The notes beneath the pieces were generated by a model, which worked only from the letters and a program-made list of their open reading frames with translations, ran no database searches and was not told where the DNA came from. The translations under genes and the position numbers were made by a program. A stretch of 63,947 nucleotides of DNA, counting the filler, from Pelomyxa schiedti (taxonomy: Eukaryota; Protista; Evosea), in the NCBI GenBank assembly GCA_020536535.1. It is 5 parts of 5 records of this genome, joined end to end, with 100 filler letters (N's around TTAATTAATTAA, not from the genome) between each part and the next. Parts side by side here need not be neighbours in the genome. Positions count along the whole stretch, not along the records: positions 1 to 30,107 come from JAHLWZ010001004.1; 4 more parts are not named here. The stretch is one strand, 5' to 3'. Each line of letters opens with the position of its first letter. The first letter of the stretch is position 1. Of this stretch, positions 149 to 27,322 are shown one piece after another.

Positions 149-416
149 CAGGGCTGCCTGACTTCCCCCTAATATTAAATCAATAAACAACACAACTGTC
201 AGTCACCACTTTGTTGATGGCATCCACGGCACCGTAAGCGATTTTTTAAAAAGGAAAAAAAAAAGAGCAGATTTCTGATAACCTCCAATCTCTGGAGGGT
301 CAGCGCTTAGCGCACTACTCAAGAGTAGGTTGGTTGTTTGAGACTGCGCAGGTACCCATTGGATATTTAAGAAGAACATTTAGAAAACATGGTCATGCCC
401 TCACTCAAAGGGGGAT

Positions 417-3400
417 TTAGGCCTTGGACTGGTTATTAGGTGTCTTGCTCCAATATCCTGTGCCATACCTGTTGCTTAAAATTAGGGGCGAAGAATTAAT
501 TTGTCAAGTACTTGTCGTTTAAAACGGGGAATCTTTCATTCAGTTCCTGGCCACAGTCTTTTCCCAGGGTACATACTACCAATCCATTGATAATCACACT
601 GTGGTCTTGTACCTTTTTTGAATACAAGTCAATGTGCGTAGAGTAATGAATACTGACCTTACTACCACCGACAAGTTCGAAGTTGTACAGTTTGGTTACG
701 AAGAGCCTAGTTGGTGTTGTGATTTCAGTTGGATGCATCCACTTGCCATTAACAAGCACCGGGTGCCCAGTGGTGAGGCCCAGTCCATTTAAAATAACCA
801 AGTTATAGTCCCTGTTGACATCCCTTGTTACAACTCGGGATACTTCCCTCGCATTCAGTGATTCTGAGAGTATAAAGTCCCCTGGAACTATCTCAGACAC
901 ATACCTGTTGGAGTCATTTGCTGCAACCAAGGACAAGAACATAGCTCACTTTGTCGTGCAGTTTGCCAAATGGACAATGCCATTTCCAAGAAAACATCCC
1001 CATCCACCAGAGGGAACGCTCTGCGGTGTTTCAATGAGAATGGATGTATCTACACTTTTTGGTGTAGGGTTCCGCCACAGTGCCTTTCTTACATATAGCT
1101 CAACATCTATCCGCATCTCAGGATGTTGAATTGATTAGGGGTCCGCACATTTATTTTTTAAATTGGGCCCTGTTTGGAGCTCAGGTGGAAGCAGTACTCG
1201 CCATATCTCATCTCCATTGCACAATGCATACAACCCCTTGCAGCACTAAAAATTACTTGGTTAAGAAACGTGGTAAAAAGACACGAAAAAGGGAAAGCTA
1301 CCATGCCTAGACGGGCAATTGATTCAGGTGGTAAAAATGAACAAATATGCGCCCAGCAGTAGGCAGAGAGTGTCAAAGTCGGAGTACTTGGGGATTGGAC
1401 TACGGGAATACTTGGGGATTGGACTACGGGAATACTTGGGGATTGGACTACGGGAATACTTGGGGACTGGACTGTTGGAATACTCAATATGAAGGCATCT
1501 CCGAGCAGGTCAGAACTGACTTGCCGTAGTAACCCACCAAAAACGATAATTTTGCCATCGTAATAAGTTGCTGCATGAAACTAAGAATATATGTAGGTAA
1601 CCAGTGAAAAAATAATTCAACCTCTCTTGCACTTGGCGCGGTCCCAGTTGGAGATAGTCTTGTCCAATTAAGGGAGTCAAAATCAAGCCTTGAAGGAGGT
1701 AATGGGACTTGAAGATAGAATATCAAACTTACTGTGATATCTCACAATTTGGATTGTCGTTGGAGGAACCAAACATCAGAAAAGAATTATCAGCAACACA
1801 GCCAACATGTCCACGTTGAGGAGTAGGGCTAGTCCCTGAGGTAGTGTGTTGCTTCCACGTCAGAGGAGAAGTTGGGCACAGCTCCCATAGGTCTGAAAGC
1901 TTCGCTCGAGCTTCAGACAAACCCCCAAATAGATAGAAAATGGCCTCTTTATTTCTCACTTAAAGTTAGCGTGAGGAAAGACTTGTATGCACTCACCTTA
2001 TTTTAAATGCCGCATGGTGACAACGAGGAGGAGGGATAAGTGAGGATTCTGCTGGGAGACTGGGTTCCCATTTTTTGGAATTTAAATTAAACTCTAATAG
2101 AGATTAAGCATGTACAAAATACAAGAAGAAATTAACTCTTTATGTCATTAAAATAAGCATCGCCAGAGCTGCCTCCAAAAATATATAGGGTATCCCAATG
2201 CCTATGAAAGATATAGTTCTTACAAACTAGATTGTGTGGATTCGCTATACTTGATAATTGATGCGCCATAACGAGGACTAGGGGCATTCGTACGGGAACC
2301 TTCTTCAGTTGGGAAGAGTTTGGTCCATTCTTGTGCCTCAAAGTTGAAGTGGAAGAGATCATTAGTCGGAATTCCTCCAATTTCACCGCCAAACAAGTAC
2401 AGATTATACATCTCCTTCACCATTGCTGGAAATTTTCCAATAGTGGGACATTGCAGTGGAGCTAACCACTTAGCAGATTTCAGGTCAAATCTCATCGTTG
2501 TCGTAAGATTTATATCCCCCGCTCCCCCAAAAATATATAGAATACCCCGGTGTTCTTCACAAACATGCCCATAACTAGATATAAAAAGAAATTAACAGAG
2601 TAAAATTTTTTTTTTTTTGAAGAACCGTAGGTGTGCTGCTGGCCTAGATTCCTGCCCAAATAACCCTTGCCAAGATGGACATTTTGCACCAGATTGAGTA
2701 CTTGCGGCCGAGTTACAATTTAAAGCTACTGTAGATTTTGGCGAATAAACTAATGACAAAAGAGATGCAAAAAACCCTGGCCAATTTTCCTATTAGATCA
2801 TTGGGAAATCTATAAACTATGAAAACCTGGTTTTGTGGGTGCTGTCACTTGGGCTGCAGTGGCGAGAGCCGCACTCGTTGAAAGTTGTGGATACATTTTT
2901 GGGAGAACCATATTTGCTGCCTCTACGAGAAGATTAAGGAAGCATTCGTGGTTCTGTCCTGTGGCATTGCTAAGTTCCACATACCCAAGTGCCCCAATAG
3001 ATTTGGCCATCTGTGATGTGATTGGTAAGTCCAAAGTGTCATAACTCAAAAAATATCAAAAAGGATACCTGAACAGCCTTTTGATAGGGAACACATCGTG
3101 CATTGGGTGTTGTGCAAGGTCCACGTTGGCCAATAAGATCAAGTTTTGTCCCTACCAAAATAACTTGGGCATACGGCGTAGCCCGGCGGTACATCTCAGA
3201 GAAGTACTATGGTGTACCAAATAAGGGCTTTCAGACTCCACTCCCTTCGGTAGTGACTCACCTCAGGCACTGTGTCCAGAGCCAGAGGATCGTCTAATGC
3301 AAACACAAGGATTCCAATGGCAGCCCCTCGATAGTACATTGGCATAAGGTTCCGGGTGCGATTCCTTCCCGCTGGATCTGAAGTGCGATTGGACAACTTA

Positions 3401-3813
3401 AAAAGAAAGGAGAGAGCAATGTCACATTACCCCACGTCTCAAACTTGATTTCACCTTTAAAAAAGTGCTAGTTAGATTAATAGCCCCAAATAAACTTGTT
3501 CAAGTTAACAATTAGAGAATACTAATACCCATTGGGCCCATAATCCTCGTGATACGGAAAGCAGCTCCAATAGTACTCTGCGGGTCCAACAAAGGCTTTC
3601 TAAAATGGAAAAAGTGCTCCAAGCTTGTCTATACAAATCCAAAAAACAAAAAAGAAAAGCTAATGTAAAAACCAATCAAGGCATTGACTTCCCATAAGTC
3701 TTTTTTTTTTTTGTGTTGTTTCATGCCTTGCCACTTTGTTCAGATCCAGCAAGAACGGCTTTGAGGGAATACTGCGTTACTGGTGGCTCAACCGACGACG
3801 TTTGATTGCTCAT
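417..3813 (-). CDS. Multi-exon protein: Ras-superfamily GTPase + Kelch repeats + F-box + C-terminal Hint (Vint/Hog-like) domain
   Basis: Spliced by hand. GTPase motifs GSEQSGKT, STIGAAF, WDPAGR, PMYYRG, VGTKLD, YVELSNATG. Kelch blades RYGHVC..LYIFGG, LYLFGG, PSPRYG..LYIFGG, PRCHHA..FYLFGG, SAREFHAA..IVFGG. The last Kelch exon runs in frame (GDAFILSIPTVQSP) into an F-box (LSAYCWAHICSFLPPESIARLGMCCKGLYALCNGDEIW). Then GGWG/CFLGNGIVHLANCTTK...LTTGHPVLVNGKW...HSVIINGLVVCTLG; stop TAA at 419-417. Confidence 0.78.
1381..1484 (-). repeat. 24-nt coding tandem repeat, about 4 copies (SIPVVQSP linker between Kelch and F-box)
   Basis: Unit GGAATACTTGGGGATTGGACTACG repeated head to tail with no spacers; in frame in the gene at 417-3813. 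Confidence 0.9.
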
Positions 3814-4073
3814 ATTTTTCAACTTAAGTGTTCGTGATGTTAGGCGAAATTCTCTTTTTGTTCTTCTCCTTTTCTCTTGGGGCTTCATTGGTTTGTTGTT
3901 GTGGGAAAGAGGTCGCGAATGGTGTGAGAACAAAGTCCTTTTTTGTGTTTAGGGTTTTCTTGGGAATTGACACAAAAGGGATGGGATTCTTGACTGCAGC
4001 AAACAGTTAGTATTTAGCACAAAAGGGATAAACAACTCCATGCATACACACCCGCAGTAGAAGCGGAAGGTTC

Positions 4074-5120
4074 TCAACTTTGATTTCCACCCAGTTGTGG
4101 TGTGGATGATGGTTGGTCCTCACGCACACGATCGGCACCACCCAGTGTCTTCTCACCCCAGTCAATTGGAACGAGGTTGAGGAGGGGAGCTTGTGGTTGT
4201 TGCGCGGTTTTGGGTGGCATGGTGCTATATATCAAATTTAGTGCACACAGAACCTGCCCGTGCTGCCAGGCACACTGCTGCTGAATGGTTTGCATCAGTT
4301 CCTTCATTTCTCTCATTTCTCCTCGCAGTTGCTGCACTTCGTTGTGAATATTGCTTACTTCTTTGTGCAGAGCCAAGTTGGCGGTCCTTGTAGTTGTTGC
4401 CGATGATTCAAGCAGTCTGTTAGAGTGATACTGGCAGAACCTACTGGTAGCACTACATGCAAGGAACCATGAATACGAGGGTGGGTTGCATGTCTCCTCA
4501 CACAGAGGCAGGAACCACACCTTAAACAACAAACGATAACAAAATTATACCTTTGTTATTGCCGCACATATCATAGTAACTAGAGTTAATTCCCTTAATA
4601 GCATACATAACATAATTCCACTAAAAACTCATATTACTTTCAAAAAAAAAAAAAACTATCTCCTCTACCTTAAATCGAGGGAAAAAAACAAACATACCAA
4701 AGTATCGGCAGATTTCTCAACAGATTGATTGTCACCAGTCGAGCTAGCAACGTGCTTTATTTTGCCCTCCTTTACACACCAACTGGGGGCCAAAGTAGAC
4801 AGCATTGCGGCCAGCTGAGGGCTGAAGTACGGCCTGATCTGGTCGATCATCTTGTCTCCGAGGCACACGACCTTGCGGCAGCCCGCCTGGTACATGAACC
4901 TCAGGCGCTGGTCCGAGTCGCCGGGGGCCGGCTGGGCCAGCGCGAATATGCGGGCCTCGCGGCGGTCGTCGTCCCACGCGAAGATGCTGCCCGTGCTCAT
5001 CTTGATGGGGCTGAGCGCCGGCTGCGACTGAGCGCGGCCCGTGCGGTCGTTGGGCTCGCATCGGATGACCCACGCGCCGTTCGGGGGCGGCGCGGGCGGC
5101 GGAGTCACAACGCTGCACAT
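4074..5120 (-). CDS. Hypothetical protein with a C-terminal coiled coil (at least 2 exons)
   Basis: ATG at 5120 opens a GC-rich first exon (ORF 4665-5120). A T-rich intron follows at about 4530-4700, then ORF 4074-4532 with heptads (EVSNIHNEVQQLRGEMREMKELMQTIQQQ). Confidence 0.55.
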
Positions 5121-7558: not shown

Positions 7559-10500
7559 TCACAGGTACCAGAAGCCCAAAACAGAGGGGTCGGTGGCGTC
7601 CGCCCACGTGGCGGCTATCAGGGTGTTTTTGTGAGAAGGAGTGCACGTGCTCGCAACCGCTCTCAGTGTGAGTATTCTGTTGGCGATGGTTTTTGTAGCG
7701 GGGGTGGGTTCATTGGTAAGCGGCATTCTACAGAGGTTGTTGTGTGATTGGGCATCCCAAAGGAGGACAACTCCATCACAGGATGCTGATAACGTGATGT
7801 GGTGGTGGTTGCGGGATGTGTCTGGTGGTGGGCAACAGGTGGTGGAAATGCACCATATTGGGGATTCGTGGTGCAAGTGACTCTGGATTGGCGGCCCTGC
7901 TGTGAAGTGTATCATCTTGTCATCGGCTGAAATATCCCATGCGGCAAGCTTGCCGGAAGACGTTCCTGCCCAGATTGTTGCTTGAGGAAGTGAAGGGGCA
8001 GTGTTTATTTCGCATATGGCTATAGAGCTCAACGAAAGCGTCGTGAAGTCCAGTGACGGGTGCATAATGATGTGAAGTGGAGCTCTTGAGGGTGCATCGA
8101 ATACAACCAAGGGCCCCCGATGACAGCACACAAATACCAGAGTGTGGCGAGGACTTGTTATAGAGAGTGACTGCATTGCCACAACCATACCATCAGGTTG
8201 TATGGAGCATGCAGATGTTGTTGCACCATCACGAAACAGCTTGGAGACGTTGAAATTGTCAAAGGGAATGAGTCCCGTACTTGAAAGTGTCCACACAGTG
8301 ATGTCACCGGTCTCATGGCCTCCCCATAGATGACAGTTGTCACTTTCCTGGCAGACACATATGAGACTAGTAATTCCTGAATTTGTGGTGCATGATAAAG
8401 TTTCAATTGGTGCATCCAGTGAAGACCATATTTTCATATCCCCAGAAGAGGTGGCAGTAATAGCACACTGCGAGACACCATGTTGGATTGGATGGTGAAT
8501 ACAGTGGCTTCCATCTTTAAAGTCTTCAATCCATAGCATCGCGGTTATCTGGCTGTGATGCGGCCTCCATTTTACAACATGTTGGCACTCAAATGAGCCC
8601 TCTCTTGACTGTTCGAACTTAAGAATGGAGATAGTTCCATCCTGATATCCACACCAAAGCCAAGTGCCAACCCACAATAACTTCCGAATATGCGCGTTCT
8701 GGTTCAGGTCTGGAGAAGTTTCGGGCTTATTGTGAGAGCAGATGCAGGGAGGGCAAATGAGTGCAACAAGCGGGTCAAGGTCCCAGGGACTGCACTGAGT
8801 TAATGGGGGAAAAAACTTTAGAACGGGCTCACTTGTTCAACCAATAAGCAATTTGACCGCATGACGGCCTTATTGACGGTATCAATTCCCAACACCAAGA
8901 AAGCATTTTGTATAGCCATTTCCATCTTCCATCTAAAAATGTTAAATTAAGTTCCACTGTGGTTACCAACCTTCTAGAAGGTAGTGAGGGGGAAGTGGAC
9001 TAATCTTCTTAGCAACTAGCTGATTCTTAACCTCTATATCGTTAAGGACTCTTATCCTCTTCCCGTTGCTTTCAACAACTTGACAAAACTGCGGTTGATG
9101 TTTAAGATGACTGAATGGTGACGAAAACATATCCAACATCCTGGTTGTAATCATACCTATATTACATTAGAAAGGGCCCTACAAGCACATTAAAGTCACC
9201 GAAACACCAGATGTCAGATTGTGGTGTATATTTGCCGCCTCCCAACACTTCAGGCGGGAGGTACAGAACTTCTGAAGAGGCGACTCCAATATTTCGCGGT
9301 GATACCAAGTCTGTGATTCCGAAATCGGCAATCTTTTCAAGTGAGATGAAATTGCAGGAAAAGAGAGATGCCTTGGCCCAAGGTCCGGTTCCATTTGGGT
9401 CAAGTGAGCAAATCATAATATTCCCTGCTAGAGGTGAACCTTACAGAGCAGAAAGAAAAATGAACCTGCATTTAAATCGCCGTGTGCCATAGGTGGGTTT
9501 TGATTATGAAGATGGTGAACACCACTGAGGATGTCGAACAGTATTTTTTCAATCAACGATAGAGGGAAATATTTATAGGCGTATTTATACTTGGCATTCA
9601 GGTTTTTTATATCTGAGACTTCGTGCTTTGAATGTGATGCCATGGTACGCACATATAAGTCAGCAGCATTGCCCAAATAACAAAGAATACTATGTAGATC
9701 TGGTCGAGATGCTAGTTTTCCCATTGAAGCTAGCTCAGTGTGTGGATTGAGTGGAATGACCAATTCAGAAGCAACGCTCAGCGTGGTGGTGATGCACGCC
9801 CCAAATATTTGCACCAGATTCGAGTGAATAGGGATTGAGTGTGCACAAGCTATTTTATAAATGAATGCAAGTGAGTCTCCCCCACTACTCTCACATGAAA
9901 ATCTTTCTATGGCCACAGATGTCTCCCTCAAAATTCCGGTATAAATCTCCCGGCTTCTGTTCGAGGTAATAATCTCCCCAACTTCTAGCTCACTGTGATG
10001 GATAATAGGTACTTGGTTCAAGGTCAAATCAGGAGCCACAATGGATAGGAACGCACCGGCCTCCATATGAGAACTCATGCATGCTTTACATTTCAAGACT
10101 CTCACCCTATTTCTTATAGCCAGTTCAATTTCTTTTTTTGTGAACCACATCACTTCAACACTGTCCTCACTTGAGTGAGAGGCATTGCAATCTTGACATA
10201 ACTGGAAATGGGAATATCCAATACAGCTTTGACAAGCAAATTGCTCGTTTAGGGTTTCATAGAGCCGTTTGTAATGGCACTTTGTTTCTGACATAATAGA
10301 TTCCACTAGGCTTATGAAAATACTTGCCCCAAGTCTCTCAAATAATGCTTTCTGATTTTCGGTTGTTCTTCGGCACTGTGGTACTGTTGTGGCTGCATTA
10401 CTGCAAACGTGCACATAAATCCATACAGAAATACTAGTAACTTCTTCAGTGATAAAAGAGGTCACTCTACACAATGTCAGAGGTTGGACAACTGATACAA

Positions 10501-13500
10501 CTAAGCCATGTTTCCACCAGCTTAGGAGTCTAATACCAGGAGTGGAAAGTATCCGGCATATACATAATGGAAATAGTCCAGGTGGTAGAAAAGAGAACTC
10601 AATAACACGACCTGTTGCCACGCAGTTGTCAGGGTGAGTTATTCTACTCCTACTAGAACATGAGCAACCCTCTATTTCAATTGGACACCAGAAGGGGATA
10701 GGATATTTCGTCTTTAGCATGGAAGTGACTGGGCTGGATGTAGCTATTGCACATGTGGGATGCTCTGGAGCCTGATGAGGTATCAGATAGTTTCCACCAG
10801 TTTTGTGAATTAAATTACAAAGCTCCAGAGTCGTTAAGGCTTCGTTCAATGTTGCAGGGCTGAATATTCTGGGACAATCTATGTACCTTATTTCACTATT
10901 TAGCAGCCACTGTGCCTTGATTGTAACTGTACAGTTAATCACTTGAAAAAGCCATTCAGGGTTAAGGATGACCAATTCCTTAAGCCTATGTTCAGAAACC
11001 TCCATAAACCACGATTTGTATTTTAAGGGATTGTGGAAGTGAATTATAAGTCCAGCATCAGCCAGAAAATCGGCGCACCTACAAAGAAAGTTAAAAAAAA
11101 AGAAGAGAAGCAAGGTGCATGCATTTCTAATTCTACTAGATCAAACTGGTCTCCTTTGCAACTACCCATGACAGTTGAAGCCTTCTTCGTGAAGTCAGTC
11201 CAACTGATAGTATTTCCTAGCCCTTGTTGCATTATTGCATGGTGTAATGTCACCCACCTAGTAGAAACCAAAATTTTATTCTTTTGGTAGATATCATCCA
11301 AAGCTCGGACGATTGCTTGAATGGAGGTCTTTTTATTGAACTGGATATCTGCAGTTGGTTCAGGAAACTGATAGCCGTCACCAGTTGAACAATTGACTGA
11401 AAATGTAGCTACGAAATGCAAACTCTCTGTAGCCACTTTCCCAATCTCTGTGAGTATAGTGCCGAGAGCAGAACGGCTCACAGATATAGTATCTCCTGCT
11501 ATCTCATCCATGTGAGTACCAACCAGCAGACATTGGACCAGCTTGTTGGATTGGTGTGATGCTTGGATCTGCTTGATCCAATCCAATAGAATTTTGATGG
11601 ATGGACAAAGCTCACAGCTACTATGTGCTGTTGTTTCCAACCATTTGGCAATCTTGGCAATATTAAGTACAACCACAACAATGGAGTCACTTCGAAGAAA
11701 AAATTGATGCAAAGGATTTCCAGGATTACCTCCTGATTGGGGGTTACTAGGTAACAATGGGGTAATATCTTACCAAAATCCCAAGCGACCCAGTTCTGTG
11801 AACTGAGTATATTGAAGTGCGAGTGAAAAGTTATTCCTCCTGTTGGTGTATAATGGTGGGTTCGGCAACGCTTTCCACCAGCTTTGAGGCACTTAAGGAG
11901 AGTTGTTTTCCCCGCTTGTGCTTCTCCAACGATGATAATCTTCTTATAATTCCACTCTTCACTGGAACCTTTATACTGAAGAAATTCTCTCAGTCTTGTC
12001 CAGTCGTTGCATGCCTTGATCATATCTGGCACGCTGGAGAGAGGATTTTCTTCAAATACCAGGTTTGGAACTTTGTGCATACAGTGTGGGAGAACCTGTA
12101 ATTTGTTTCCTTTTAAATCCAGTGTTGTGATTTGAACAGGAATGGCTTCTGCTACCCGAACCGGAAAATCAGTCAATGACAAATAAGACAAGTCTAAGAA
12201 AGCAAAGAGAAGTGGGTACTCTGAAAGCAGCATATGTACGGTGTCCCAGTCCCTAGCTTCAGTATATTGTCTGATAATGTGCAGTGCAAACATTTTCCCT
12301 GTGTCCCTGACCCCCAAGGCTGTGGAGTGGAGTAAAACTTGCATCACATTATGTACATCACTCAGCGTAAGGCATGTAGTGTGAAGAGATTTTCTAAACA
12401 AAAGTACAGCAGCAACTCTGGTTGATGTGCAGTGTTCAATAATATACATAACTGTAGTATAGCCCCTGAAAATGCAAGAACCAGATATAGCTTTGCACTT
12501 TCTGCAAAATACGGCAGGTTGCAGTGTGAGAAGATAATTCAAAGGAGCAGGTGCAGATTCTCGAATATATTTTCTTGCACAGCGCAATAATCCTTTGTTT
12601 GTGAAGGCAGCTTGGACCTTAGCTCGAAAGAGGTTGTTTCGGGTGAGTATACTTTTGATTGATTCCGGTTCGTGTGGCTGTCCTATGTAAACTTATTGAA
12701 TTTACTGTGTGCTTCTGTAATACCCTCAATCTGTAGCTGTGTCAAGGAAAAGTTGGATCTCAATGCATCTAGAATTGCTTCTGGTTGCACTTGACACCCT
12801 GGCTACTTTAACATAGACTATAAGTCAATACAGTTACCTTTAATATTAAAAGTGGAGAGGCACGAGTTAGTTGCCAGCATGGTACTAATGTAGTTGATAT
12901 CTTCCTCTTTCATGATATTTCCTGAACAAAACGTAAGTCAGCTTAGAAAGTGCAGGAAAACCTTGGAGATCAATTGTGGTAAGAGTACAATTTTTTGCAA
13001 TAGCTTCACAAAGAATTGGGTAAGCTGCTCCTTCGATATGACACCCTGGAAAGATTTTAGATTTGACAATTAATCTCATTCTTACAAGAAAGGTCTAACC
13101 GGGTAAGAGTTGCATTCAGACTTATTACATCTGCTAACAATTTGGACCTGTCATGGTCGAGGTGGTTCCCTTGTGAAGAAGTTAGGAGTATAAGTTAACT
13201 TTATGGATGTACCCACCTCCCAGCTTGAGCTCCAATAAAGTCGAGTTATTTATCAGAGCCACCCTAATTAGCTGGAAGGCGCCGGAGCAAAGATTGCAAG
13301 CTTTTCAAAAACTTCGGTTATTCACCATTTCAAAAGTTGGGTGTATAACAAAATATTTTAAAGGAGAGAAGAAAACATTGGAGGCCAAGAGATGTCAATG
13401 ACAAGTTTGAGGTGAGAGAATCACAAAGGGGCCGCAGTCCGTCCTTGTCAAACACACTCCCTGGTAGTCATAAAATTGCAACAAGGGGAAAATTATGATA

Positions 13501-14927: not shown

Positions 14928-17900
14928 ATGCACCATCGTGGGAAGGTGTCACGGAAGAACAAGAGGCAGGATGGAAGTGAGACTGAGGAGGGTGCTGTGC
15001 GGAAGTACGACTGCGGATCTTGTTGTTCTTCTTGTTGTTGTTGCCGCGGGATCTTCTCGAGCCGTGGCGCACTGTCAGTTCTGTGCCTTGCCGTGAGTCT
15101 CGTGGCGTTTTGCGTCTCGCTGAGAGTTGCTATGGTTTTCACTGTTCCAGCGATTTCGTGCGGTTCACTGTGTGGCGCGCAGTCGCAACTCACGAGGGGA
15201 TTTGGAGGCGAGAGGAGTAGGGTACTGTTACCCAAGGATGCAGTGCCGGTGCATTACGACTTGAGGCTCAGTCCTTCCCTTGATGAGTCTGTTACCACAG
15301 GTTTACAGTTGGGCGAAATCTGCTTTCGTCACATCAATATTTCAGGAGAGGTGGACATTCAACTCCTTGTGATGAATTCTACAAGGCAAATAACATTGCA
15401 TTCTGTTGACACAACAATCAGCCGTGCTGTGGTCGCAGGGGCAGGCATGGAATTGAATGTGAAACACCCGATATTTTTCTATCGTTGAAGACAAATAGGC
15501 GAAAATTGTGATGGATAAAGAAAAGCAAATGGTACTTCTGAAATTTGATGATCTTTTGCCAGCTGGTGATGCAATTTTACACATGTCATTTATATCGAAA
15601 TTGAACAGAAAAATGACTGGATTTTACACTTCTACTTATACCATAAACTCCGAGTCACGGTAATACTACTACAACGCAAATGAAATTATAATAAAAACCA
15701 GAACCATGGCAGTTACCCAATTTGAGCCTTCAGGTTTCTTTTCTTCGATTTTATTCTTCAAAATAAACCACGGTATAGATGCGAGGCAAGCGTTTCCCTG
15801 TTGGGATGAACCTGCTTTGAAATCCACGTTCTCTATCACACTGATTGTGCCAGTTAGCTTAACCGCACTTTCAAATATGCCAGTAGAAAGTGAGACAGTT
15901 CACCCAAATGGTGCACTTTTTTCTTTTTCTGTTTGGTGTAATGAACACATTAAATAGGGCTAAAGGAAGTTAAATTTATGAAATCCCCAAAGATGTCAAC
16001 CTATCTTGTATTTCCTTTCCACTTTATGTAACTAATTTTTCTAGATAGCATTTGTAGTGGGAGAGCTTGATTACCTCGAAGCAGCAACGAAAAGTGGTAT
16101 TAAGGTAGTGGGAAGTCTCCAAAAATGACAACTAAGTGTTCTCCCAGGTGAGAGTTTATACTACACCAGGGAAAAATCACCAAGGGCGATTTGCTCTGGA
16201 TGTTGCTGGTTGGCATTCCTTCTAATTGGCATCATATAGCTGACTGTAAAAGTTAGGACACTTGATTATTATAACGATTACTTCAGAATTCCATATCCAC
16301 TTCCGAAATGGTACTTATGTCCTCCGTTGAACAGGTGTTCACATTATGTGCAGTGATATGGTGGCAATTCCTGATTTTGCCCCTGGAGCAATGGAGTTGA
16401 GTGCAAGGAAATCCTGTGTTCATAACTTACGATGACGTTTCCCCTCCCTAAAAAAAGGAACTGGGGACTTGTAACATACCGCGAGACTGCTTTATTGCTA
16501 CAAGAAGGCAGTGTTACCTTGTTTACCAAGCTTATCGGACTCATCAAGTACCACAGGGTCAAGTTCAGTATCATCCAAGCAAAGAGTGGCTTACATAGTT
16601 GGGCATGAACGTAAGTGCGAACTGGAACCATGATATTATTAACATTTTTTTAGTAGCGCACCAATGGTTTTTTTCCATTTATCCCCTCCCATATAACTTA
16701 ACCTCAAGGTTCGGTAACCTTGTCACAATGGAGTGGTGGTCCAACCTATGGTTAAATGAGGGATTTGCAACTTATGTTGGATACCAAATGGTGGATATCC
16801 TGTTTCCTCAATGGTATTTTTTTTTTTGTTTACCCTTGCCCACTTTCTTCTTTCCCAATCAAAGGCACATATGGATCACATTTACATCAACGGAGTTTTC
16901 TACTGTATTGTCTCTCGATAACACACACGGTCTAAATTGCCCTTTCAGGCCTTGAAGCTAGACGCACTTACAAATACTCATGCAATTGAAGTTGAAGTTT
17001 ATGAGTCACATGATGTCACAGAAATATTTGATCCCATTTCTTACGCCAAAGGTTAGCAATATTTCTAGTGGTGAGACTGAAAATTGGTCGTAGGAGCCTC
17101 TGTTATAAGAATGCTCTCTTCCTACCTTGGTGAAGCACCTTTCAAGGCAGGACTTAATATTTATTTGAACAAATTTCTGTATTCAAACGCAATAACAGAG
17201 GTACAATCAAATAAAACATTTGTAAATGAAAACTGCACTTAAGGATTTGTGGGATGCCCTGACTGAAGCTTCTGGAATTGACATTGCCAAAGGAATGAGT
17301 GCATGGACTAAGACTATGGGATATCCAGTAGTTTCGATATATGCCAATGCATCTACTATCACCTTCAAACAGACTCGGATGATGTTTTGCACCTCTAATA
17401 AGGCCACTGGTATTACAAATCTTAGCAACACCGTTAAAAAACCAATACAGATCAACAATGGTGGATACCCATCATTCTCTCCTCAAACAACAAGCACCTT
17501 CCAAATAAAATTGAACTTTCCGCAACTTCTCTTTCCTTCCCACATGATGGCTCGGATATCTGGCTAAAGGTAAAACTCTCCACGTTTTCTGCTTCCACTG
17601 CCACAACTTGCTTCCATAGGCCAATTACGGCCAAACTGGGCTCTATAGAGTTCAATATGGAGAAAACTTATTGGAAAATCTAAAGTAAGTCCTTCCTTTC
17701 GATTCAGTACCCATGTCTCCAGGATGAAAATCAAGGATCAAACTCTTGGTGCTATCGACAGACTCGGCGTACTGAGTGACTATTTTTCACTGGCCGTTTC
17801 TGGACTTACACCAACCTCTTCAGCCTTGTCACTTGCAATGGCGTCAATTAATGAAGTGGAATATGCCGTGTGGGCAAATATAGTCTCATCTCTTGGTAAC

Positions 17901-19003
17901 TAATTTTGTATTGTATTGCCTGCACTAATACACAGCAGCTCACTTCGCAAGTGTTTGGAGTAATCAAGAAAATTTGAAAACAATACACAATTTTCAAAGA
18001 ACCTTGTACACACCAATCGCAGAAAAACTTGGTTGGACACCCTCTCCATCAGACGGTAACCTGCATCAACTCCTTTATCTCCCCTGTTTAAAAACAAGCA
18101 TAAATAACACTTACATGAAGCCATATCCAATAGATGACCTTACGAAACGCCTTAGAGGTCTAGTGCGGAGTGCACTTGTTGAAGCTCAAGACCCTCGAAC
18201 CTTGGCTTTATGTCTTGATTCATTATCCTCATTTTTGGTGGATCCTGCATCAATGTCCCCAGATCTCCGACTAGCAGTTTTTTCTGCTGTAATGATTGTG
18301 AATGAAACAGATGGATTCAACATATTACATGCACTCTATAAACAGGTACATTCCATCATTGTTCCAGCTTATGGTTATGAAAGTAGGATAGCACACCGGA
18401 GCAACAAGTGATAATTCTATTCAGCATGGGTTGTACCCGTAGCTCTGATGTTGCTGAACAACTCCTTGTATCTTTTTTTTTCCTTCTTGCTATTTCAAAA
18501 ATTCATGTACAATAGAACTGGGGATCCAGGTCTGGAGAAGTCCGGCATCAAGACTTTCCATCACTGTTTCATTCTGTTGCTGACCACCATCCAGGTATCA
18601 TTTCTTCAACTCTTTTACTTCTAACACCCATAGAAATTGCATGGGATTGGCTCACTTCGAATTGGGAATGGGTGGATGAAACCTTCCAGGGGACCATTTC
18701 TCTGCTACAGTCTATCAGTATCACCCTCTTCACTCCCAATCAATCCTTACCATTTCAGTTTCCTCAGTTGTGACTCTTTTCAAGACGGAGGAGCAAATTA
18801 AAGCTGCAGACAGTTTCTTCAAACAAACAGGAACACTCAAGGGTTCCTCCCTTTTCTTATCCCAAAGTTATGAAACTGTCTGTGAGTATCCCACACTTCC
18901 ACCCTCTTTTCTCTTTCTTCCTCACTCTTTCCAAGGTGTACAATCAAGATGGCTCGCAAGAGACCACACAGACGTGAAAAATTGGCTACAGCAATTTTCA
19001 TAG
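14928..19003 (+). CDS. M1 family zinc aminopeptidase (puromycin-sensitive/aminopeptidase N-like) with an N-terminal signal anchor
   Basis: Motifs [30 protein letters not shown] and GAMENWGL (spliced). HELAHQWFGNLVT...WLNEGFA (HEXXH+E) spans two introns. Also [10 protein letters not shown], and an N-terminal hydrophobic stretch [18 protein letters not shown]. Confidence 0.93.
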
Positions 19004-24488: not shown

Positions 24489-27322
24489 ATGGACGAAGCA
24501 AGCCCATTTCGTTGTACTGTTCGTCGCTTACCCGGCAGCGATGATGGTTTGCCCGTCGCTCAGCAGCAAGTGTCGGTCGTCACATTCACGGACAAGACAA
24601 CAGCGGAGCTGGCGGCCGAGGTCGCGCCGGGCACAGGAACCACCCGGATCCTGTCACTGCTCAGCCCCGTGGACGACTGCGACCAAGCGTCGGGCGCTAC
24701 GTCCACACATTCGTCGACGTCTTCGTCTTATGCTGAATACGGCTCTGGCGCGTCGAATCCCTCCTCGGGCGGCGAGGGCGCGAGGGGCGCTGGGGCACCC
24801 ATAAGTAGGAACATTGTGGCGGTGCTCAGGGCGTTCGTGGCTGGGATACGCAAGCCGTCGACGGTGCAAGAAAAGAAGCTGGCCGACATCAAGAAGCTGC
24901 TACACGAGTGCCTTGGGGCTTATCTGGAGCACTATCCTGAAACAACTCGTATCTGGGAGGCCAGAATTGTGCACTTCTCAAAAAAGTCTGGTGACAATAC
25001 ACTGGCATCCACCGAGGCTGACATCATGGTAATGAAACAACCCTTTTTTTTTTTTTTTTTCTTTTCTATACTTCCCTTTCCCCTGCTTTCATAAATGTTT
25101 CTTTTATTGTTTCCTCTAACAATTTCCTTTTTTGTGTTTTTTTTTTCTTTCCCAAGTAGCTGCAAGGTTGAAACTAACTTGCCTATGTACTCAAGGTATG
25201 GTACCTCCCATTTGGCTTGGCGACAAAGGCCCACCATTACTCTTGGTGGCTTAGCTGCACTCTGATCAAAAGGGACACACCGTGTCCGCTGCACTACGGG
25301 CGGTTACTTCCCTGCGCCACGAAAACCTCCAAGTCCGCCAAACACACCAGCTCCTCGCATCCTGCACACCCTGAGATATCGAGCCTCATAGGCACCAATG
25401 TCTATACGCAGAGCAAAGCAGCAAGTCACCCAAATATCGAGTCCCTGAACCTATTTCTCTTCGAGGAAAAGTTGCGCATCCTGAAGAACAAATTTGACGA
25501 GCAAAAAAAAGCGGCAGATGGACTGAACCTTCCGAAGATTTCCGACCCTGAAACCCCGACCACAAATCAACCAGCACTAACTTCTGCATGGGTGGAGCAA
25601 CAAAGAAAAAAGATGCAGAAACAGCTAAGCGATGTGAGAGCAAAGAGGGACCGGATCAACATGCCGAAGGGGGGGCAGAGCCCCGTCTCTCTTGCACCCG
25701 GCGCTACCACCCCTACAAGTAACCGTGGCAACTCAGTTGAACCACTTCGCCCTCTCACTATCGCAGCTGCCGCCACCGCAGCAGCAACGGCTTCAGCCTC
25801 AACTTCACTTAGCATTATCCCCCCAATGAGTGACAACGAAGGCATCCCCATGAACCCTCTTCAACACCCGGAAAGTAAATGGAAGCAGTTCATCCCCTTG
25901 ATTTTCCAGATAATGGAGCTAAGTACCTTTAAAACTTGGAAAACTTGGCTTATTTGCAGAGAATGCGATGGGCTGCTCCGGGCTTTGGGGCCAGATGCAC
26001 CAGTCAAGGCTACTGCTTTCGCACTAAAAACGATGTTAAACTATTCAGCAGAGACCAGAACAATGGAAATCAGTGATACTTCTGATGAGTGCACACTGTT
26101 TTACTCCCACTGGTGTATAGCAAATATTTTCCACACGTTCGTTAGCGGTCCGAGGGCTTGGTTGGCTGGAGGCACAATAGGTGAAACTATACCCGTTGCA
26201 AGACGCACATCGTACCTCGTAGAGGAACGCGGCAAGCGCAACCTGAGGACCATCCCCCTAGGAAGGAGCAGAAAACTACCAGACGAGTTTGGCCACAGCC
26301 CGCTCCAGGTGGATACCCTTGCCTTTTGCCTTTTGTGTGCATGTGACAACTTGAATTCTCACGGGTGGTACCACAATGACATCAGCCCCGACAACATCCT
26401 CTTGATCCATCGTACAACTACTACGGAAATTTCTCACATCCTCCGTGGGGATATATGGGCCCTGTGTGACTTGGGAACCTCTCAGCACTACCCAACTGGA
26501 GAGGTCAGTGTCAAACGCTTCGTGGGCAATCCTATCAACAAGTCCCCAGAGGTAACCAGCGCCAGAAGCGATGTGCTCCTTATCTCAAAGAACGACCTGT
26601 GGGGTATAGGGGTCGTTCTGTACGAGGTCATCGTGGGTAAACATCCCTACCACAGGAACGGTGTAATTGACCAATATATGCTCCTCACCTCGCCAGATCC
26701 GTTCCTCATACCCAATGAATTCGTAGATGGCAGCACACGAGTCGCGGCACTTGTGCCCTATCTCCTGGAGCGAGACTGTCTCGTCAGACCCACTGCCAAA
26801 GAAGCTCTGCTCATATGCGGGGCCCTCATGTTCCTGTCTCCCCTCCCTGGCACAAGATGGAGAAGAAGTGGGGAGGACGCGAGAGGCGGCGGGGCTTGTT
26901 CGCCGCCCCAGCTGTGGCAACTCCCACCCAAAGCGATGTGCGATTTGCAACACACCAGCGAAATCATCGACCTATCATCCACGCAACCGGAGCACATCGT
27001 GAAGTCCATACAGTTCTTCACCGACAACTCAGCGCTGGTTGAAACAACACTGATACAGCTGCTCTGTGGCACCCTCGAATCCATGCAGCCTGAACCGTCG
27101 GCACTGGAGCCAACGCCGACTGTTGAACAAGTGTGTTTGTTGCTGTTTGCAAACGAAGCTCTGTCTGACGTTGATGCATTCTGTGCCGTCATGCTTGCCT
27201 TCTGCCAGCGCAGGGCTGTATATTACCATGTAGTTGCCACGAACCCTACTCTGAGCATTCCTGTACAGCAAGTGTCTACCGAATCCTTCCCACCCTCCAG
27301 CACTATTGTTAACTGTTCTTAA
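24489..27322 (+). CDS. Divergent protein kinase-like protein (recognisable C-lobe) with a long N-terminal region
   Basis: Exons join in frame (EADIM/VETNLPMYS/SCTLIKR). Kinase motifs WYHNDISPDNILL, WALCDLGTS, NKSPEV and KNDLWGIGVVLYE. No Gly-rich loop or VAIK motif recognisable. Confidence 0.72.

What the first reader, a model, noticed from the sequence alone, without database searches (positions are those of the whole stretch)
417..3813. One gene encoding small GTPase + Kelch propeller + F-box + self-cleaving Hint domain
Seen in sequence: after removing short introns, fragments that the ORF track lists separately form one frame. The 'MSIPTVQ' ORF begins at an internal TTG that continues the last Kelch exon. 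The Hint domain keeps its N-terminal catalytic Cys (GGWG/CFLGNG, codon 996-994) and the block-B TxxH motif (TTGH). It ends HSVIINGLVVCTLG, Vint/Hog-like, without the intein terminal Asn. Established: Hedgehog-type Hint domains cleave at G/C through a thioester and can attach a nucleophile to the upstream fragment, and F-box+Kelch proteins are SCF substrate receptors. Inference: this could be a GTPase-bearing ubiquitin-ligase adaptor whose C-terminus is autocatalytically cleaved or adducted just after the F-box. I know of no described protein with this architecture.
Basis: partly seen in the sequence, partly recalled or inferred. Interest (0 to 1): 0.88.

Follow-up and report, generated by a model that had tools for sequence, protein, structure and literature searches.

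The report
GTPase–Kelch–F-box protein with self-cleaving Vint domain
One real, expressed 18-exon gene of the anaerobic amoeba Pelomyxa schiedti encodes a small GTPase, a Kelch propeller and an F-box (the parts of a ubiquitin-ligase substrate receptor) followed by a Hedgehog/intein-type self-cleaving domain, a combination that is multiplied in this amoeba's lineage and that I could not find discussed in the literature.

Summary
The minus strand 3813..417 holds one 18-exon gene for an 835-aa protein. Spliced RNA contigs confirm 14 of its 17 introns. My model is identical to a GenBank protein of Pelomyxa schiedti that carries only the automatic name "Kelch-type beta propeller".

All four domains pass Pfam's curated cut-offs:
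- Ras-family GTPase, nearest Rab5
- six-blade Kelch propeller
- F-box
- Vint-type Hint domain

The Hint nucleophile Cys688 (codon 996-994), Thr747 and His750 are conserved in essentially all 61 related Vint domains. The predicted fold matches the crystal structure of the Tetrahymena Vint domain (Z 16.5). Vint is the most conserved part of the protein among paralogs.

At least 11 P. schiedti paralogs share Kelch–F-box–Vint. Other members of this amoeba's family, Pelomyxidae, carry WWE–F-box–Vint or WD40–F-box–Vint. The canonical Vint family is U-box–VWA–Vwaint–Vint, so Vint repeatedly accompanies ubiquitin-ligase modules.

The likely mechanism is inferred, not shown: a precursor cuts itself at Gly687|Cys688 through a thioester and releases a GTPase–Kelch–F-box receptor.

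The result is a new variant of a known kind, of moderate interest.

The parts
417..3813 (-). Whole coding region: 18 exons, 17 introns of 41-98 nt, 835 codons plus TAA
   Evidence: Model built. It is identical to GenBank protein P0092. It aligns collinearly with paralog P0001 at 69% identity.
3727..3813 (-). Exon 1 (aa 1-29, up to P-loop GSEQSGK), followed by a GC-AG intron at 3629-3726
   Evidence: No RNA cover. Supported. GC-AG introns make up 1.59% of introns in this genome (PMC8887013).
3529..3628 (-). Exon 2 (P-loop Thr, switch I STIG)
   Evidence: No RNA cover.
3431..3454 (-). Exon 3, a 24-nt micro-exon (GEIKFETW)
   Evidence: X1 contig 4 reads through 3262-3481 unspliced, which is a retained-intron form.
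3262..3377 (-). Exon 4 (DPAG, switch II)
   Evidence: The 3' junction 3262|3206 is confirmed by X1.
3069..3206 (-). Exon 5 (TKLD G4 motif)
   Evidence: Junctions 3206|3262 and 3010|3069 are confirmed.
2827..3010 (-). Exon 6 (end of GTPase, linker)
   Evidence: Junctions are confirmed.
2626..2776 (-). Exon 7 (linker, start of Kelch blade 1)
   Evidence: Junctions 2776|2827 (X1) and 2574|2626 (X2) are confirmed.
2251..2574 (-). Exon 8 (Kelch blades 1-3)
   Evidence: Pfam Kelch hits on this piece.
2137..2201 (-). Exon 9 (Kelch)
   Evidence: Junctions are confirmed by X1.
1997..2093 (-). Exon 10 (Kelch)
   Evidence: Junctions are confirmed by X1.
1733..1954 (-). Exon 11 (Kelch blades 4-5)
   Evidence: Junction 1688|1733 is seen in X1, X2 and X3.
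1622..1688 (-). Exon 12 (Kelch)
1302..1580 (-). Exon 13 (Kelch blade 6, SPSIPVVQ repeat, first half of F-box)
   Evidence: Junctions 1580|1622 and 1245|1302 are confirmed.
1381..1484 (-). 24-nt tandem repeat x4.3 coding SPSIPVVQ, a variable linker between Kelch and F-box
   Evidence: Tandem Repeats Finder. The DNA run X4 holds a form 48 nt shorter. The repeat is absent from paralog P0001.
1149..1245 (-). Exon 14 (second half of F-box)
   Evidence: X3 contig 10.
1180..1379 (-). F-box, aa 593-640, split by intron 1246-1301
   Evidence: On the whole protein, Pfam gives F-box-like 25.3 bits and F-box 21.9 bits, both above their cut-offs. AlphaFold predicts a helical bundle here.
950..1106 (-). Exon 15 (linker, cleavage site, first Hint strands)
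   Evidence: X3 contig 10.
994..999 (-). Predicted scissile bond Gly687|Cys688 (codons 999-997 and 996-994)
   Evidence: Cys is present in 59 of the 59 sequences that cover this column. It aligns to residue 1 of inteins and to Cys258 of Hedgehog.
658..904 (-). Exon 16 (Hint core with TTGH)
   Evidence: Junctions 904|950 and 612|658 are seen in X1, X2 and X3.
763..774 (-). Block B Thr747-Thr-Gly-His750
   Evidence: Thr in 57 of 61 (Ser in the other 4), His in 61 of 61, and the following Pro in 61 of 61.
512..612 (-). Exon 17 (DHSVIINGLVVCTLGKDCG...)
417..468 (-). Exon 18 (YGTGYW tail and TAA stop)
   Evidence: Junction 468|512 in X3 contig 9.
444..996 (-). Vint-type Hint domain, aa 688-827
   Evidence: Pfam Vint E 7.3e-19. 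Family profile against PDB chain 8r2c E 2.8e-27. Foldseek E 3e-9 and VIA-align Z 16.5 over 140 residues.
2924..3762 (-). Rab-like small GTPase domain, aa 18-184
   Evidence: Pfam Ras E 3.4e-23. Nearest solved structure is Rab5, E 2e-17.
1521..2663 (-). Six-blade Kelch propeller, aa 255-545
   Evidence: Pfam Kelch families, E down to 3e-57.

Best explanation
This is one cytosolic protein of Pelomyxa schiedti. From N- to C-terminus it has:
- a Rab-like GTPase
- a six-blade Kelch propeller
- a short variable Ser/Pro repeat
- an F-box
- a 47-residue conserved linker
- a Vint-type Hint domain that ends the protein

The first three functional parts look like an SCF-type substrate receptor. Kelch would bind the target, the F-box would bind Skp1, and the GTPase would act as a nucleotide-dependent switch or localiser.

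The protein is most likely made as a precursor. Cys688 attacks the Gly687 carbonyl in an N-to-S acyl shift, helped by Thr747 and His750. The thioester is then resolved by water or by a nucleophile not yet known. This separates a 687-residue GTPase–Kelch–F-box fragment from a Vint fragment of about 17 kDa.

Shown here: gene structure, transcription and splicing, domain identities, Hint fold, residue conservation and family expansion. Inferred: cleavage, the nucleophile, Skp1 binding and GTP binding.
For: - **One spliced transcript.** The model equals the deposited protein.
- **Domains.** All four pass Pfam cut-offs.
- **Catalytic residues across 61 Vint domains.** Cys1 in 59 of 59, Thr in 57 plus Ser in 4, His, Pro and Trp each in 61 of 61.
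- **Constraint.** Vint is the best conserved segment among paralogs, at 85-87% to close and 42-55% to distant ones. The GTPase is at 44-56% and 22-25%.
- **Fold.** The Hint part of the model has pLDDT above 90. The top structural match is the Vint crystal structure 8R2C at Z 16.5, followed by BIL2, inteins and Hedgehog HhC at Z about 11, with Cys688 on their residue 1.
- **Architecture recurs.** The same order of domains is found in at least 10 paralogs.
- **Link to ubiquitin ligases.** Vint sits after F-box, WWE or WD40 in other Pelomyxidae proteins and after U-box–VWA in the canonical family (PMC2362128).
- **GTPase motifs.** GSEQSGKT, STIG, DPAG, TKLD and SNA are all present (sequence).
Against: - No biochemical data exist for this protein. 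I found no published cleavage assay for any Vint domain.
- The residue before Cys1 varies among G, S, A, K, P and E.
- Cys799, the position matching Hedgehog's branched-intermediate Cys143, is conserved in only 35 of 61 Vint domains.
- The F-box scores are only just above the Pfam cut-offs, and LP is LS in this copy.
- The GTPase has Arg in place of the catalytic Gln. In most paralogs the GTPase domain has lost its P-loop Ser/Thr or its DxxG motif, so nucleotide switching may not be essential to the family.
- The first three introns have no RNA cover.
Confidence: 0.62

Rival explanations
1. The Vint thioester is not simply hydrolysed. It is used to join the new C-terminus of the F-box receptor covalently to a nucleophile. 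That could be a lysine of a partner or substrate protein, an E1/E2-independent ligation like that of the Tetrahymena BUBL/BIL2 Hint domain, or a lipid that anchors the GTPase-bearing receptor to a membrane, as cholesterol does for Hedgehog.
For: - BIL2 is the second-best structural match. It is reported to conjugate a ubiquitin-like domain to substrates, including a Ras GTPase, without ATP (PMC8616854).
- Vint repeatedly accompanies E3 modules: U-box, F-box and WWE.
- The linker before the cut site carries a conserved motif, LW(R/K)NPTP.VV.
- The GTPase lacks its own C-terminal prenylation site because it is N-terminal in a multidomain protein (sequence).
Against: - No acceptor is known.
- The position I matched by eye to Hedgehog's cholesterol-activating Asp46 (Asp731 here) is not conserved.
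- There is no sterol-recognition region. The conserved C-terminal tail is part of the Vint fold itself, since 140 residues align to 8R2C.
- There is no ubiquitin-like domain upstream of the cut site.
Confidence: 0.15
2. The Vint domain no longer cleaves. It serves as a folded C-terminal module for binding, dimerisation or stability of the F-box protein.
For: - Non-cleaving Hint-fold domains exist.
- The residue at position -1 is variable, and Cys799 is not universal.
- No experiment shows cleavage.
Against: The exact catalytic set is kept in essentially every one of 61 diverged copies: Cys1, Thr/Ser-x-x-His and the following Pro. The domain is the most constrained part of the protein. That pattern is what selection on chemistry produces, not selection on a scaffold alone.
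Confidence: 0.2
3. The four-domain protein is an artefact: adjacent genes fused by gene prediction, or a chimeric contig from single-cell whole-genome amplification.
For: - The genome comes from amplified single cells (PMC8887013).
- RNA contigs break at 1414/1415, inside the tandem repeat.
- There is no RNA cover over 3494-3850.
Against: - Spliced contigs bridge every domain boundary.
- Depth is continuous across the repeat in X1 and X3.
- The frame stays open through 18 exons.
- At least 10 paralogs on other contigs have the same domain order.
Confidence: 0.02

Closest known systems
VWA–Vwaint–Vint proteins, often with an N-terminal U-box (Bürglin 2008, PMC2362128; Pfam PF14623; crystal structure 8R2C from Tetrahymena thermophila)
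   Same: Both have a Vint-type Hint domain at the very C-terminus of an intracellular protein. Both have Cys1, block A and block B TxxH(P). Neither has an intein C-terminal Asn or a Hedgehog sterol region. In both, the domain sits downstream of a ubiquitin-ligase module.
   Different: This protein has no VWA and no Vwaint domain. The upstream part is GTPase–Kelch–F-box instead. The Pfam Vint model matches only positions 1-119 of 166. The tail has a subfamily-specific motif, CTLGKDCG...YGTG(Y/F)W.
Hedgehog/Hog autoprocessing domains (HhC; PDB 1AT0, 6TYY)
   Same: Both have the Hint fold (Z about 11). Both have a Gly|Cys-Phe junction and the Thr-x-x-His block. Both have a Cys near the end of the fold, Cys799 here and Cys143 in HhC, which forms a branched thioester.
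   Different: This protein has no signal peptide and no sterol-recognition region. The Asp46 equivalent, matched by eye, is not conserved. Pfam Hint (PF01079) is not matched at E 0.01 or better. It is cytosolic, and its N-terminal cargo is a ligase adaptor rather than a secreted signal.
BUBL/BIL2 of Tetrahymena (Hint domain between ubiquitin-like domains)
   Same: Both are Hint domains embedded in the ubiquitin system. BIL2 is the second-best structural match, Z 12.6 (PMC8616854).
   Different: BIL2 has a C-terminal Asn and a downstream Ubl domain, and it forms an isopeptide bond. Here nothing follows the Hint domain, and the upstream partner is an F-box receptor rather than ubiquitin.
F-box/Kelch substrate receptors (for example human FBXO42/JFK and plant F-box–Kelch proteins), and GTPase-bearing cullin adaptors such as RhoBTB (from my own knowledge)
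   Same: F-box plus Kelch propeller is a standard SCF receptor layout. RhoBTB shows that a small GTPase can be built into a cullin-RING adaptor.
   Different: The domain order is reversed here, with Kelch before F-box. A GTPase is added at the N-terminus and a Hint domain at the C-terminus.
Naegleria lovaniensis F-box protein P0226 (Kelch–F-box–Ras)
   Same: It contains the same three non-Hint domain types in one protein.
   Different: The order is different, with the GTPase last. It has no Hint domain. Identity is only 23%, so it is probably an independent assembly.

Membership tests
Vint-type Hint domain (PF14623) | Profile match above the curated cut-off | tested here: met
   68.6 bits against a cut-off of 27, E 7.3e-19, aa 687-807. 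The family profile against the Vint crystal sequence 8r2c gives E 2.8e-27.
Vint-type Hint domain (PF14623) | Hint fold | tested here: met
   The AlphaFold model has pLDDT above 90 over the domain. 8R2C matches with Foldseek E 3e-9 and VIA-align Z 16.5 over 140 residues. Inteins and HhC match at Z about 11. This is a predicted model, not a solved structure.
Vint-type Hint domain (PF14623) | N-terminal Cys nucleophile and block B Thr-x-x-His | tested here: met
   Cys688, Thr747 and His750 are present and conserved in 59/59, 57/61 (plus 4 Ser) and 61/61 sequences.
Vint-type Hint domain (PF14623) | Canonical upstream VWA and Vwaint domains | tested here: not met
   There is no VWA or Vwaint hit on P0092. 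Canonical members P0036, P0037, P0038 and P0078 have them.
Vint-type Hint domain (PF14623) | Autocatalytic cleavage at the residue before Cys1 | not testable with these tools
   This needs recombinant protein or proteomics.
Intein | C-terminal Asn (or Gln/Asp) followed by a Cys/Ser/Thr of a C-extein that is ligated to the N-extein | tested here: not met
   The fold ends in ...NGLVVCTLG plus a helical tail, and the protein stops 8 residues after the domain. There is no extein.
Hedgehog/Hog domain | Secreted precursor with a sterol-recognition region after Hint, and a Pfam Hint (PF01079) match | tested here: not met
   PF01079 does not hit P0092 at E 0.01 or better. The N-terminus is a GTPase, not a signal peptide. 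The C-terminal tail aligns within the Vint fold.
F-box protein (SCF substrate receptor) | F-box profile match | tested here: met
   F-box-like scores 25.3 bits (cut-off 24.3) and F-box 21.9 bits (cut-off 20.5), so the match is marginal. Paralogs score up to 50 bits. The region is predicted to be a helical bundle.
F-box protein (SCF substrate receptor) | Binds Skp1 and assembles with a cullin | not testable with these tools
   This needs a pull-down assay.
Kelch beta-propeller | Repeated Kelch motifs forming a propeller | tested here: met
   Several Kelch families match at E 1e-16 to 3e-57 over aa 260-543. Six GG...W blades can be read in the sequence.
Ras-superfamily small GTPase | Profile match and G1-G5 motifs | tested here: met
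   Pfam Ras E 3.4e-23. Rab5 structures match at E 2e-17. The motifs GSEQSGKT, T48, DPAG, TKLD and SNA are all present.
Ras-superfamily small GTPase | Catalytic Gln after DxxG (intrinsic GTP hydrolysis) | tested here: not met
   The sequence is DPAGRN, with Arg76 in place of Gln.

The most novel reading that the evidence does not exclude
In Pelomyxidae, and by extension in the U-box–VWA–Vint proteins of many protists, the Vint domain is a built-in single-turnover ligase. Its thioester would transfer the whole E3 receptor, through its new C-terminus, onto a protein lysine or a membrane lipid. That would be a Hint-driven, E1/E2-independent way of tethering or consuming ubiquitin-ligase adaptors.
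Probability: 0.12. Interest if true: 0.85.

Novelty: new variant of a known kind. Interest (0 to 1): 0.55.

Why it matters
**Why it matters**

- **An uncharacterised domain gets a context.** Vint domains were defined in 2008, and a crystal structure was released in 2024. I found no work on what they do.
- **The domain is under strong constraint here.** It sits at the end of a whole lineage-specific set of F-box substrate receptors (Kelch, WWE and WD40 types).
- **A recurrent pairing.** Together with the canonical U-box–VWA–Vint layout, this shows that Vint repeatedly joins ubiquitin-ligase modules.
- **A testable hypothesis follows.** Self-cleavage, or thioester transfer, may regulate or be part of E3 adaptor function. 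A short recombinant fragment would be enough to test it.
- **An unusual adaptor.** The protein is also a rare case of a small GTPase built into an F-box receptor.

Tried and rejected
- **Exon boundaries guessed wrongly.** My first hand model had four boundaries wrong: the acceptors of exons 5, 7 and 12 and the donor of exon 11. It also missed two introns in the last exon. RNA junctions corrected this.
- **Pfam on single exons.** This was too weak for Ras (E 0.0055) and F-box (E 0.2), because introns split both domains. The problem was solved only when the deposited full-length protein was retrieved.
- **Word-based homolog searches.** Outside Pelomyxa, searches with the N-terminal part and with the family profile returned only generic Kelch proteins. 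The one exception was a Naegleria Kelch–F-box–Ras protein.
- **Subfamily F-box HMM.** It did not detect F-boxes in the other Vint proteins. Profile tests of their 'LPxxxLxxI...CxCxCH...LVCKRF' region were only suggestive. PDB hits had E 0.4-0.9, though all six were F-box proteins. hhalign gave P 7e-4 and probability 26%.
- **Full-length AlphaFold run.** With 10 sequences it gave a poor model (pLDDT 61.6), and I drew no conclusion on domain packing.
- **ESM Atlas look-alikes.** These were short Vint-only clusters at low scores and gave no information on architecture.
- **Literature searches.** Searches for F-box+Hint, Vint biochemistry and 8R2C found no relevant study.
Full report
**Source**

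The window's real piece is a 30,107-bp contig. The word-index search returned an 835-aa GenBank protein of Pelomyxa schiedti whose longest contig is 30,107 bp (P0092, "Kelch-type beta propeller"). P. schiedti is a free-living anaerobic archamoeba. Its genome and Smart-seq2 single-cell transcriptomes were published in PMC8887013. That paper reports 7.4 introns per gene and 1.59% GC-AG introns. It does not mention Hint, F-box or Kelch.

**Gene structure**

- Reading the minus strand of 380-4100, I joined 16 exons by hand into one open frame.
- I then laid contigs of three RNA runs and one DNA run of the same study on 400-3950.
- Spliced contigs with CT..AC ends, which are GT..AG on the minus strand, confirm 14 introns: 3207-3261, 3011-3068, 2777-2826, 2575-2625, 2202-2250, 2094-2136, 1955-1996, 1689-1732, 1581-1621, 1246-1301, 1107-1148, 905-949, 613-657 and 469-511.
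- These junctions corrected four of my boundaries and added two small 3' introns.
- The corrected model has 18 exons and 835 codons, with the ATG at 3813 and TAA at 419-417. It is identical to P0092.
- Introns 1-3 have no RNA cover, because depth is zero over 3494-3850. They are 3629-3726 (GC-AG), 3455-3528 and 3378-3430, the last two flanking a 24-nt micro-exon.
- Those three introns are supported by the deposited model and by a gap-free alignment of that stretch with paralog P0001. In that alignment the P-loop, switch I and the 'GE(I/L)KFE(T/I)WD' strand line up.
- Some RNA contigs retain introns. X1 contig 4 reads through 3262-3481. X2 contig 7 retains 2777-2826 and 3011-3068 while splicing 2575-2625. 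Partly spliced RNA is therefore common in these libraries.

**One transcript**

- Contigs bridge 2328..3078 (Kelch to GTPase exons), 1415..2538 (linker to Kelch) and 656..1414 (Hint to F-box and repeat). Junctions continue to 402.
- The only break, at 1414/1415, lies inside a 24-nt x4.3 tandem repeat at 1381-1484. That repeat also differs by 48 nt in the DNA run.
- RNA depth is continuous on both sides of the break.

**Domains**

On the whole protein, Pfam gives the following:

| Domain | Residues | Score |
|---|---|---|
| Ras | 18-184 | E 3.4e-23 |
| Kelch families | 260-543 | E down to 3e-57 |
| F-box-like | 603-634 | 25.3 bits (cut-off 24.3) |
| F-box | 600-634 | 21.9 bits (cut-off 20.5) |
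| Vint | 687-807 | E 7.3e-19 |

- The GTPase is nearest to Rab5 structures, E 2e-17.
- It has GSEQSGKT, Thr48, DPAG, TKLD and SNA, but Arg76 where the catalytic Gln should be.
- Six Kelch blades can be read in the sequence.

**The Hint domain**

- A search of 1.84 billion cluster representatives with the last large exon found 90 relatives.
- In an alignment of 61 of their Vint domains, conservation is near total:
  - Cys688 is present in all 59 sequences that cover the column.
  - Thr747 is Thr in 57 and Ser in 4.
  - His750, Pro751 and Trp758 are each present in 61 of 61.
- Cys799 sits where Hedgehog has Cys143, which forms a branched thioester (PMC12054796). It is invariant in the Kelch subfamily but present in only 35 of 61 overall.
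- The residue before Cys1 varies.
- The position I matched by eye to Hedgehog Asp46 is not conserved.
- AlphaFold on aa 585-835 with this alignment gave mean pLDDT 82.7, and above 90 over the Hint part.
- Foldseek puts the crystal structure of the Tetrahymena Vint domain (8R2C) first, at E 3e-9. Next come BIL2 of the Tetrahymena BUBL locus, inteins and Hedgehog HhC.
- VIA-align gives Z 16.5 over 140 residues for 8R2C, including the C-terminal helices, and about 11 for inteins and HhC. Model residue 104 (Cys688) falls on their residue 1.
- The family profile hits the 8R2C sequence at E 2.8e-27.
- There is no terminal Asn and no C-extein, so this is neither an intein nor a Hedgehog-type Hog domain.

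**Family**

- The same GTPase-like–Kelch–F-box–Vint order occurs in P. schiedti paralogs P0001, P0093, P0094, P0011, P0006, P0028 and P0005.
  - P0005 is truncated at the N-terminus.
  - P0002 has Kelch–F-box–Vint behind a weak peptidase-M28-like stretch and has no GTPase.
  - P0031 is a shorter form.
  - P0091 has a Fic domain in front of a half GTPase.
- Only P0092 keeps all the G motifs. P0001 has lost DxxG, and most of the others have lost the P-loop Ser/Thr.
- Identity to P0092 by segment shows Vint as the most conserved part: 85-87% to close and 42-55% to distant paralogs. The GTPase is at 44-56% and 22-25%.
- Other relatives carry WWE–F-box–Vint (P0003; P0004 and P0055 of Mastigella eilhardi), WD40–F-box-like–Vint (P0025, Pelomyxa sp. 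JSP) or F-box–Vint (P0009).
- Exact look-ups name at least 23 Vint proteins of P. schiedti.
- Eight non-Kelch members share an 'LPxExLLxI...CxCxCH...LCTLELVCKRF' segment that looks like an F-box with an inserted Cys/His loop. Support for this is only suggestive.
- More distant hits are the canonical U-box–VWA–Vwaint–Vint proteins described by Bürglin in 2008. He judged them to be intracellular and noted U-boxes in some (PMC2362128).
- Outside Pelomyxidae I found no F-box–Vint protein. A Naegleria lovaniensis protein has Kelch–F-box–Ras without a Hint domain.

**Mechanism**

- The conserved catalytic set, the fold and the strong constraint on the domain argue that Vint is chemically active here.
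- The most economical reading is a precursor that undergoes an N-to-S acyl shift at Gly687|Cys688 and releases a 687-residue GTPase–Kelch–F-box receptor.
- The sequence cannot say whether the thioester is hydrolysed or passed to another nucleophile.
- The BUBL precedent shows that transfer is possible. There, a Hint domain conjugates a ubiquitin-like domain to substrates without ATP (PMC8616854). No acceptor, sterol region or ubiquitin-like domain is present in this protein.
- That the domain is a dead scaffold is less likely, given the conservation pattern.
- A fusion artefact is excluded in practice.

**Novelty**

- The protein and its paralogs are public, but with automatic names only.
- None of my literature searches found a discussion of F-box–Hint proteins or any biochemical study of a Vint domain.
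- The library lacks most subscription journals, so a paper tied to 8R2C may exist that I could not see.
- I rate this a new variant of a known kind.

Noticed in passing
window 1381-1484: A 24-nt tandem repeat x4.3 codes SPSIPVVQ between the last Kelch blade and the F-box. The DNA run X4 holds a contig that lacks 48 nt (1385-1432). Paralog P0001 has no such repeat. The repeat also breaks the RNA assemblies at 1414/1415.
   Followed up: partly
window 3629-3726 and 3431-3454: Intron 1 has GC-AG ends. Exon 3 is a 24-nt micro-exon that codes the strand before the DxxG motif. Neither is covered by spliced RNA here.
   Followed up: partly
window 2777-2826, 3011-3068, 3378-3481: RNA contigs retain these introns, while other contigs of the same libraries splice the first two. 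The 45-nt introns 613-657 and 905-949 are multiples of three. Intron 613-657 has no stop codon, yet it is spliced in all three runs.
   Followed up: partly
window 2597 and 2605 (inside intron 2575-2625): The DNA run X4 shows A>G at 2597 and an extra T after 2605, next to a poly-A/T run. This may be assembly or allelic variation in an intron.
   Followed up: no
paralog P0091 (P. schiedti, 1075 aa): It has a Fic domain (aa 218-301, E 1.7e-12) in front of a GTPase remnant, then Kelch–F-box–Vint. Fic enzymes commonly modify small GTPases. It could also be a gene-model fusion.
   Followed up: no
P0010, P0019, P0020, P0024, P0027, P0215, P0018 (P. schiedti) and P0017 (Mastigella): A second Vint subfamily has the junction ...K|CFTG(D/E)G. 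It carries a conserved region of about 120 residues before the Hint domain with no Pfam match ('LQREPP...AFGNF...AYALL...VEAGN(V/I)GNLKCYAFF.SGAYAHTPQ').
   Followed up: no
P0003, P0004, P0013, P0015, P0025, P0029, P0043, P0055: These proteins have an F-box-like segment interrupted by a CxCxCH loop, which could be a metal site, upstream of Vint. The profile evidence is weak (hhalign P 7e-4; PDB hits all F-box, but at E 0.4-0.9).
   Followed up: partly
P0226 (Naegleria lovaniensis, 764 aa) and P0166 (Logan contig, 607 aa): Small GTPases fused to Kelch propellers occur elsewhere: Kelch–F-box–Ras in Naegleria, and Kelch–Ras in an unnamed assembly.
   Followed up: partly
P0090 (688 aa) and P0026 (Trimastix marina): There is a methyltransferase–Vint fusion, and a Vint relative in a metamonad. 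The Vint subfamily therefore reaches beyond Archamoebae.
   Followed up: no
window 9428-12587 (-), about 15000-18400 (+), 25217-27322 (+), 7559-8677 (-): The neighbouring genes are unrelated to the finding. They are a Roco-like gene (weak COR-A match, P-loop 'GEAQAGKTTL'), an M1 aminopeptidase (Peptidase_M1, ERAP1_C), a protein kinase and a WD40-like ORF.
   Followed up: partly
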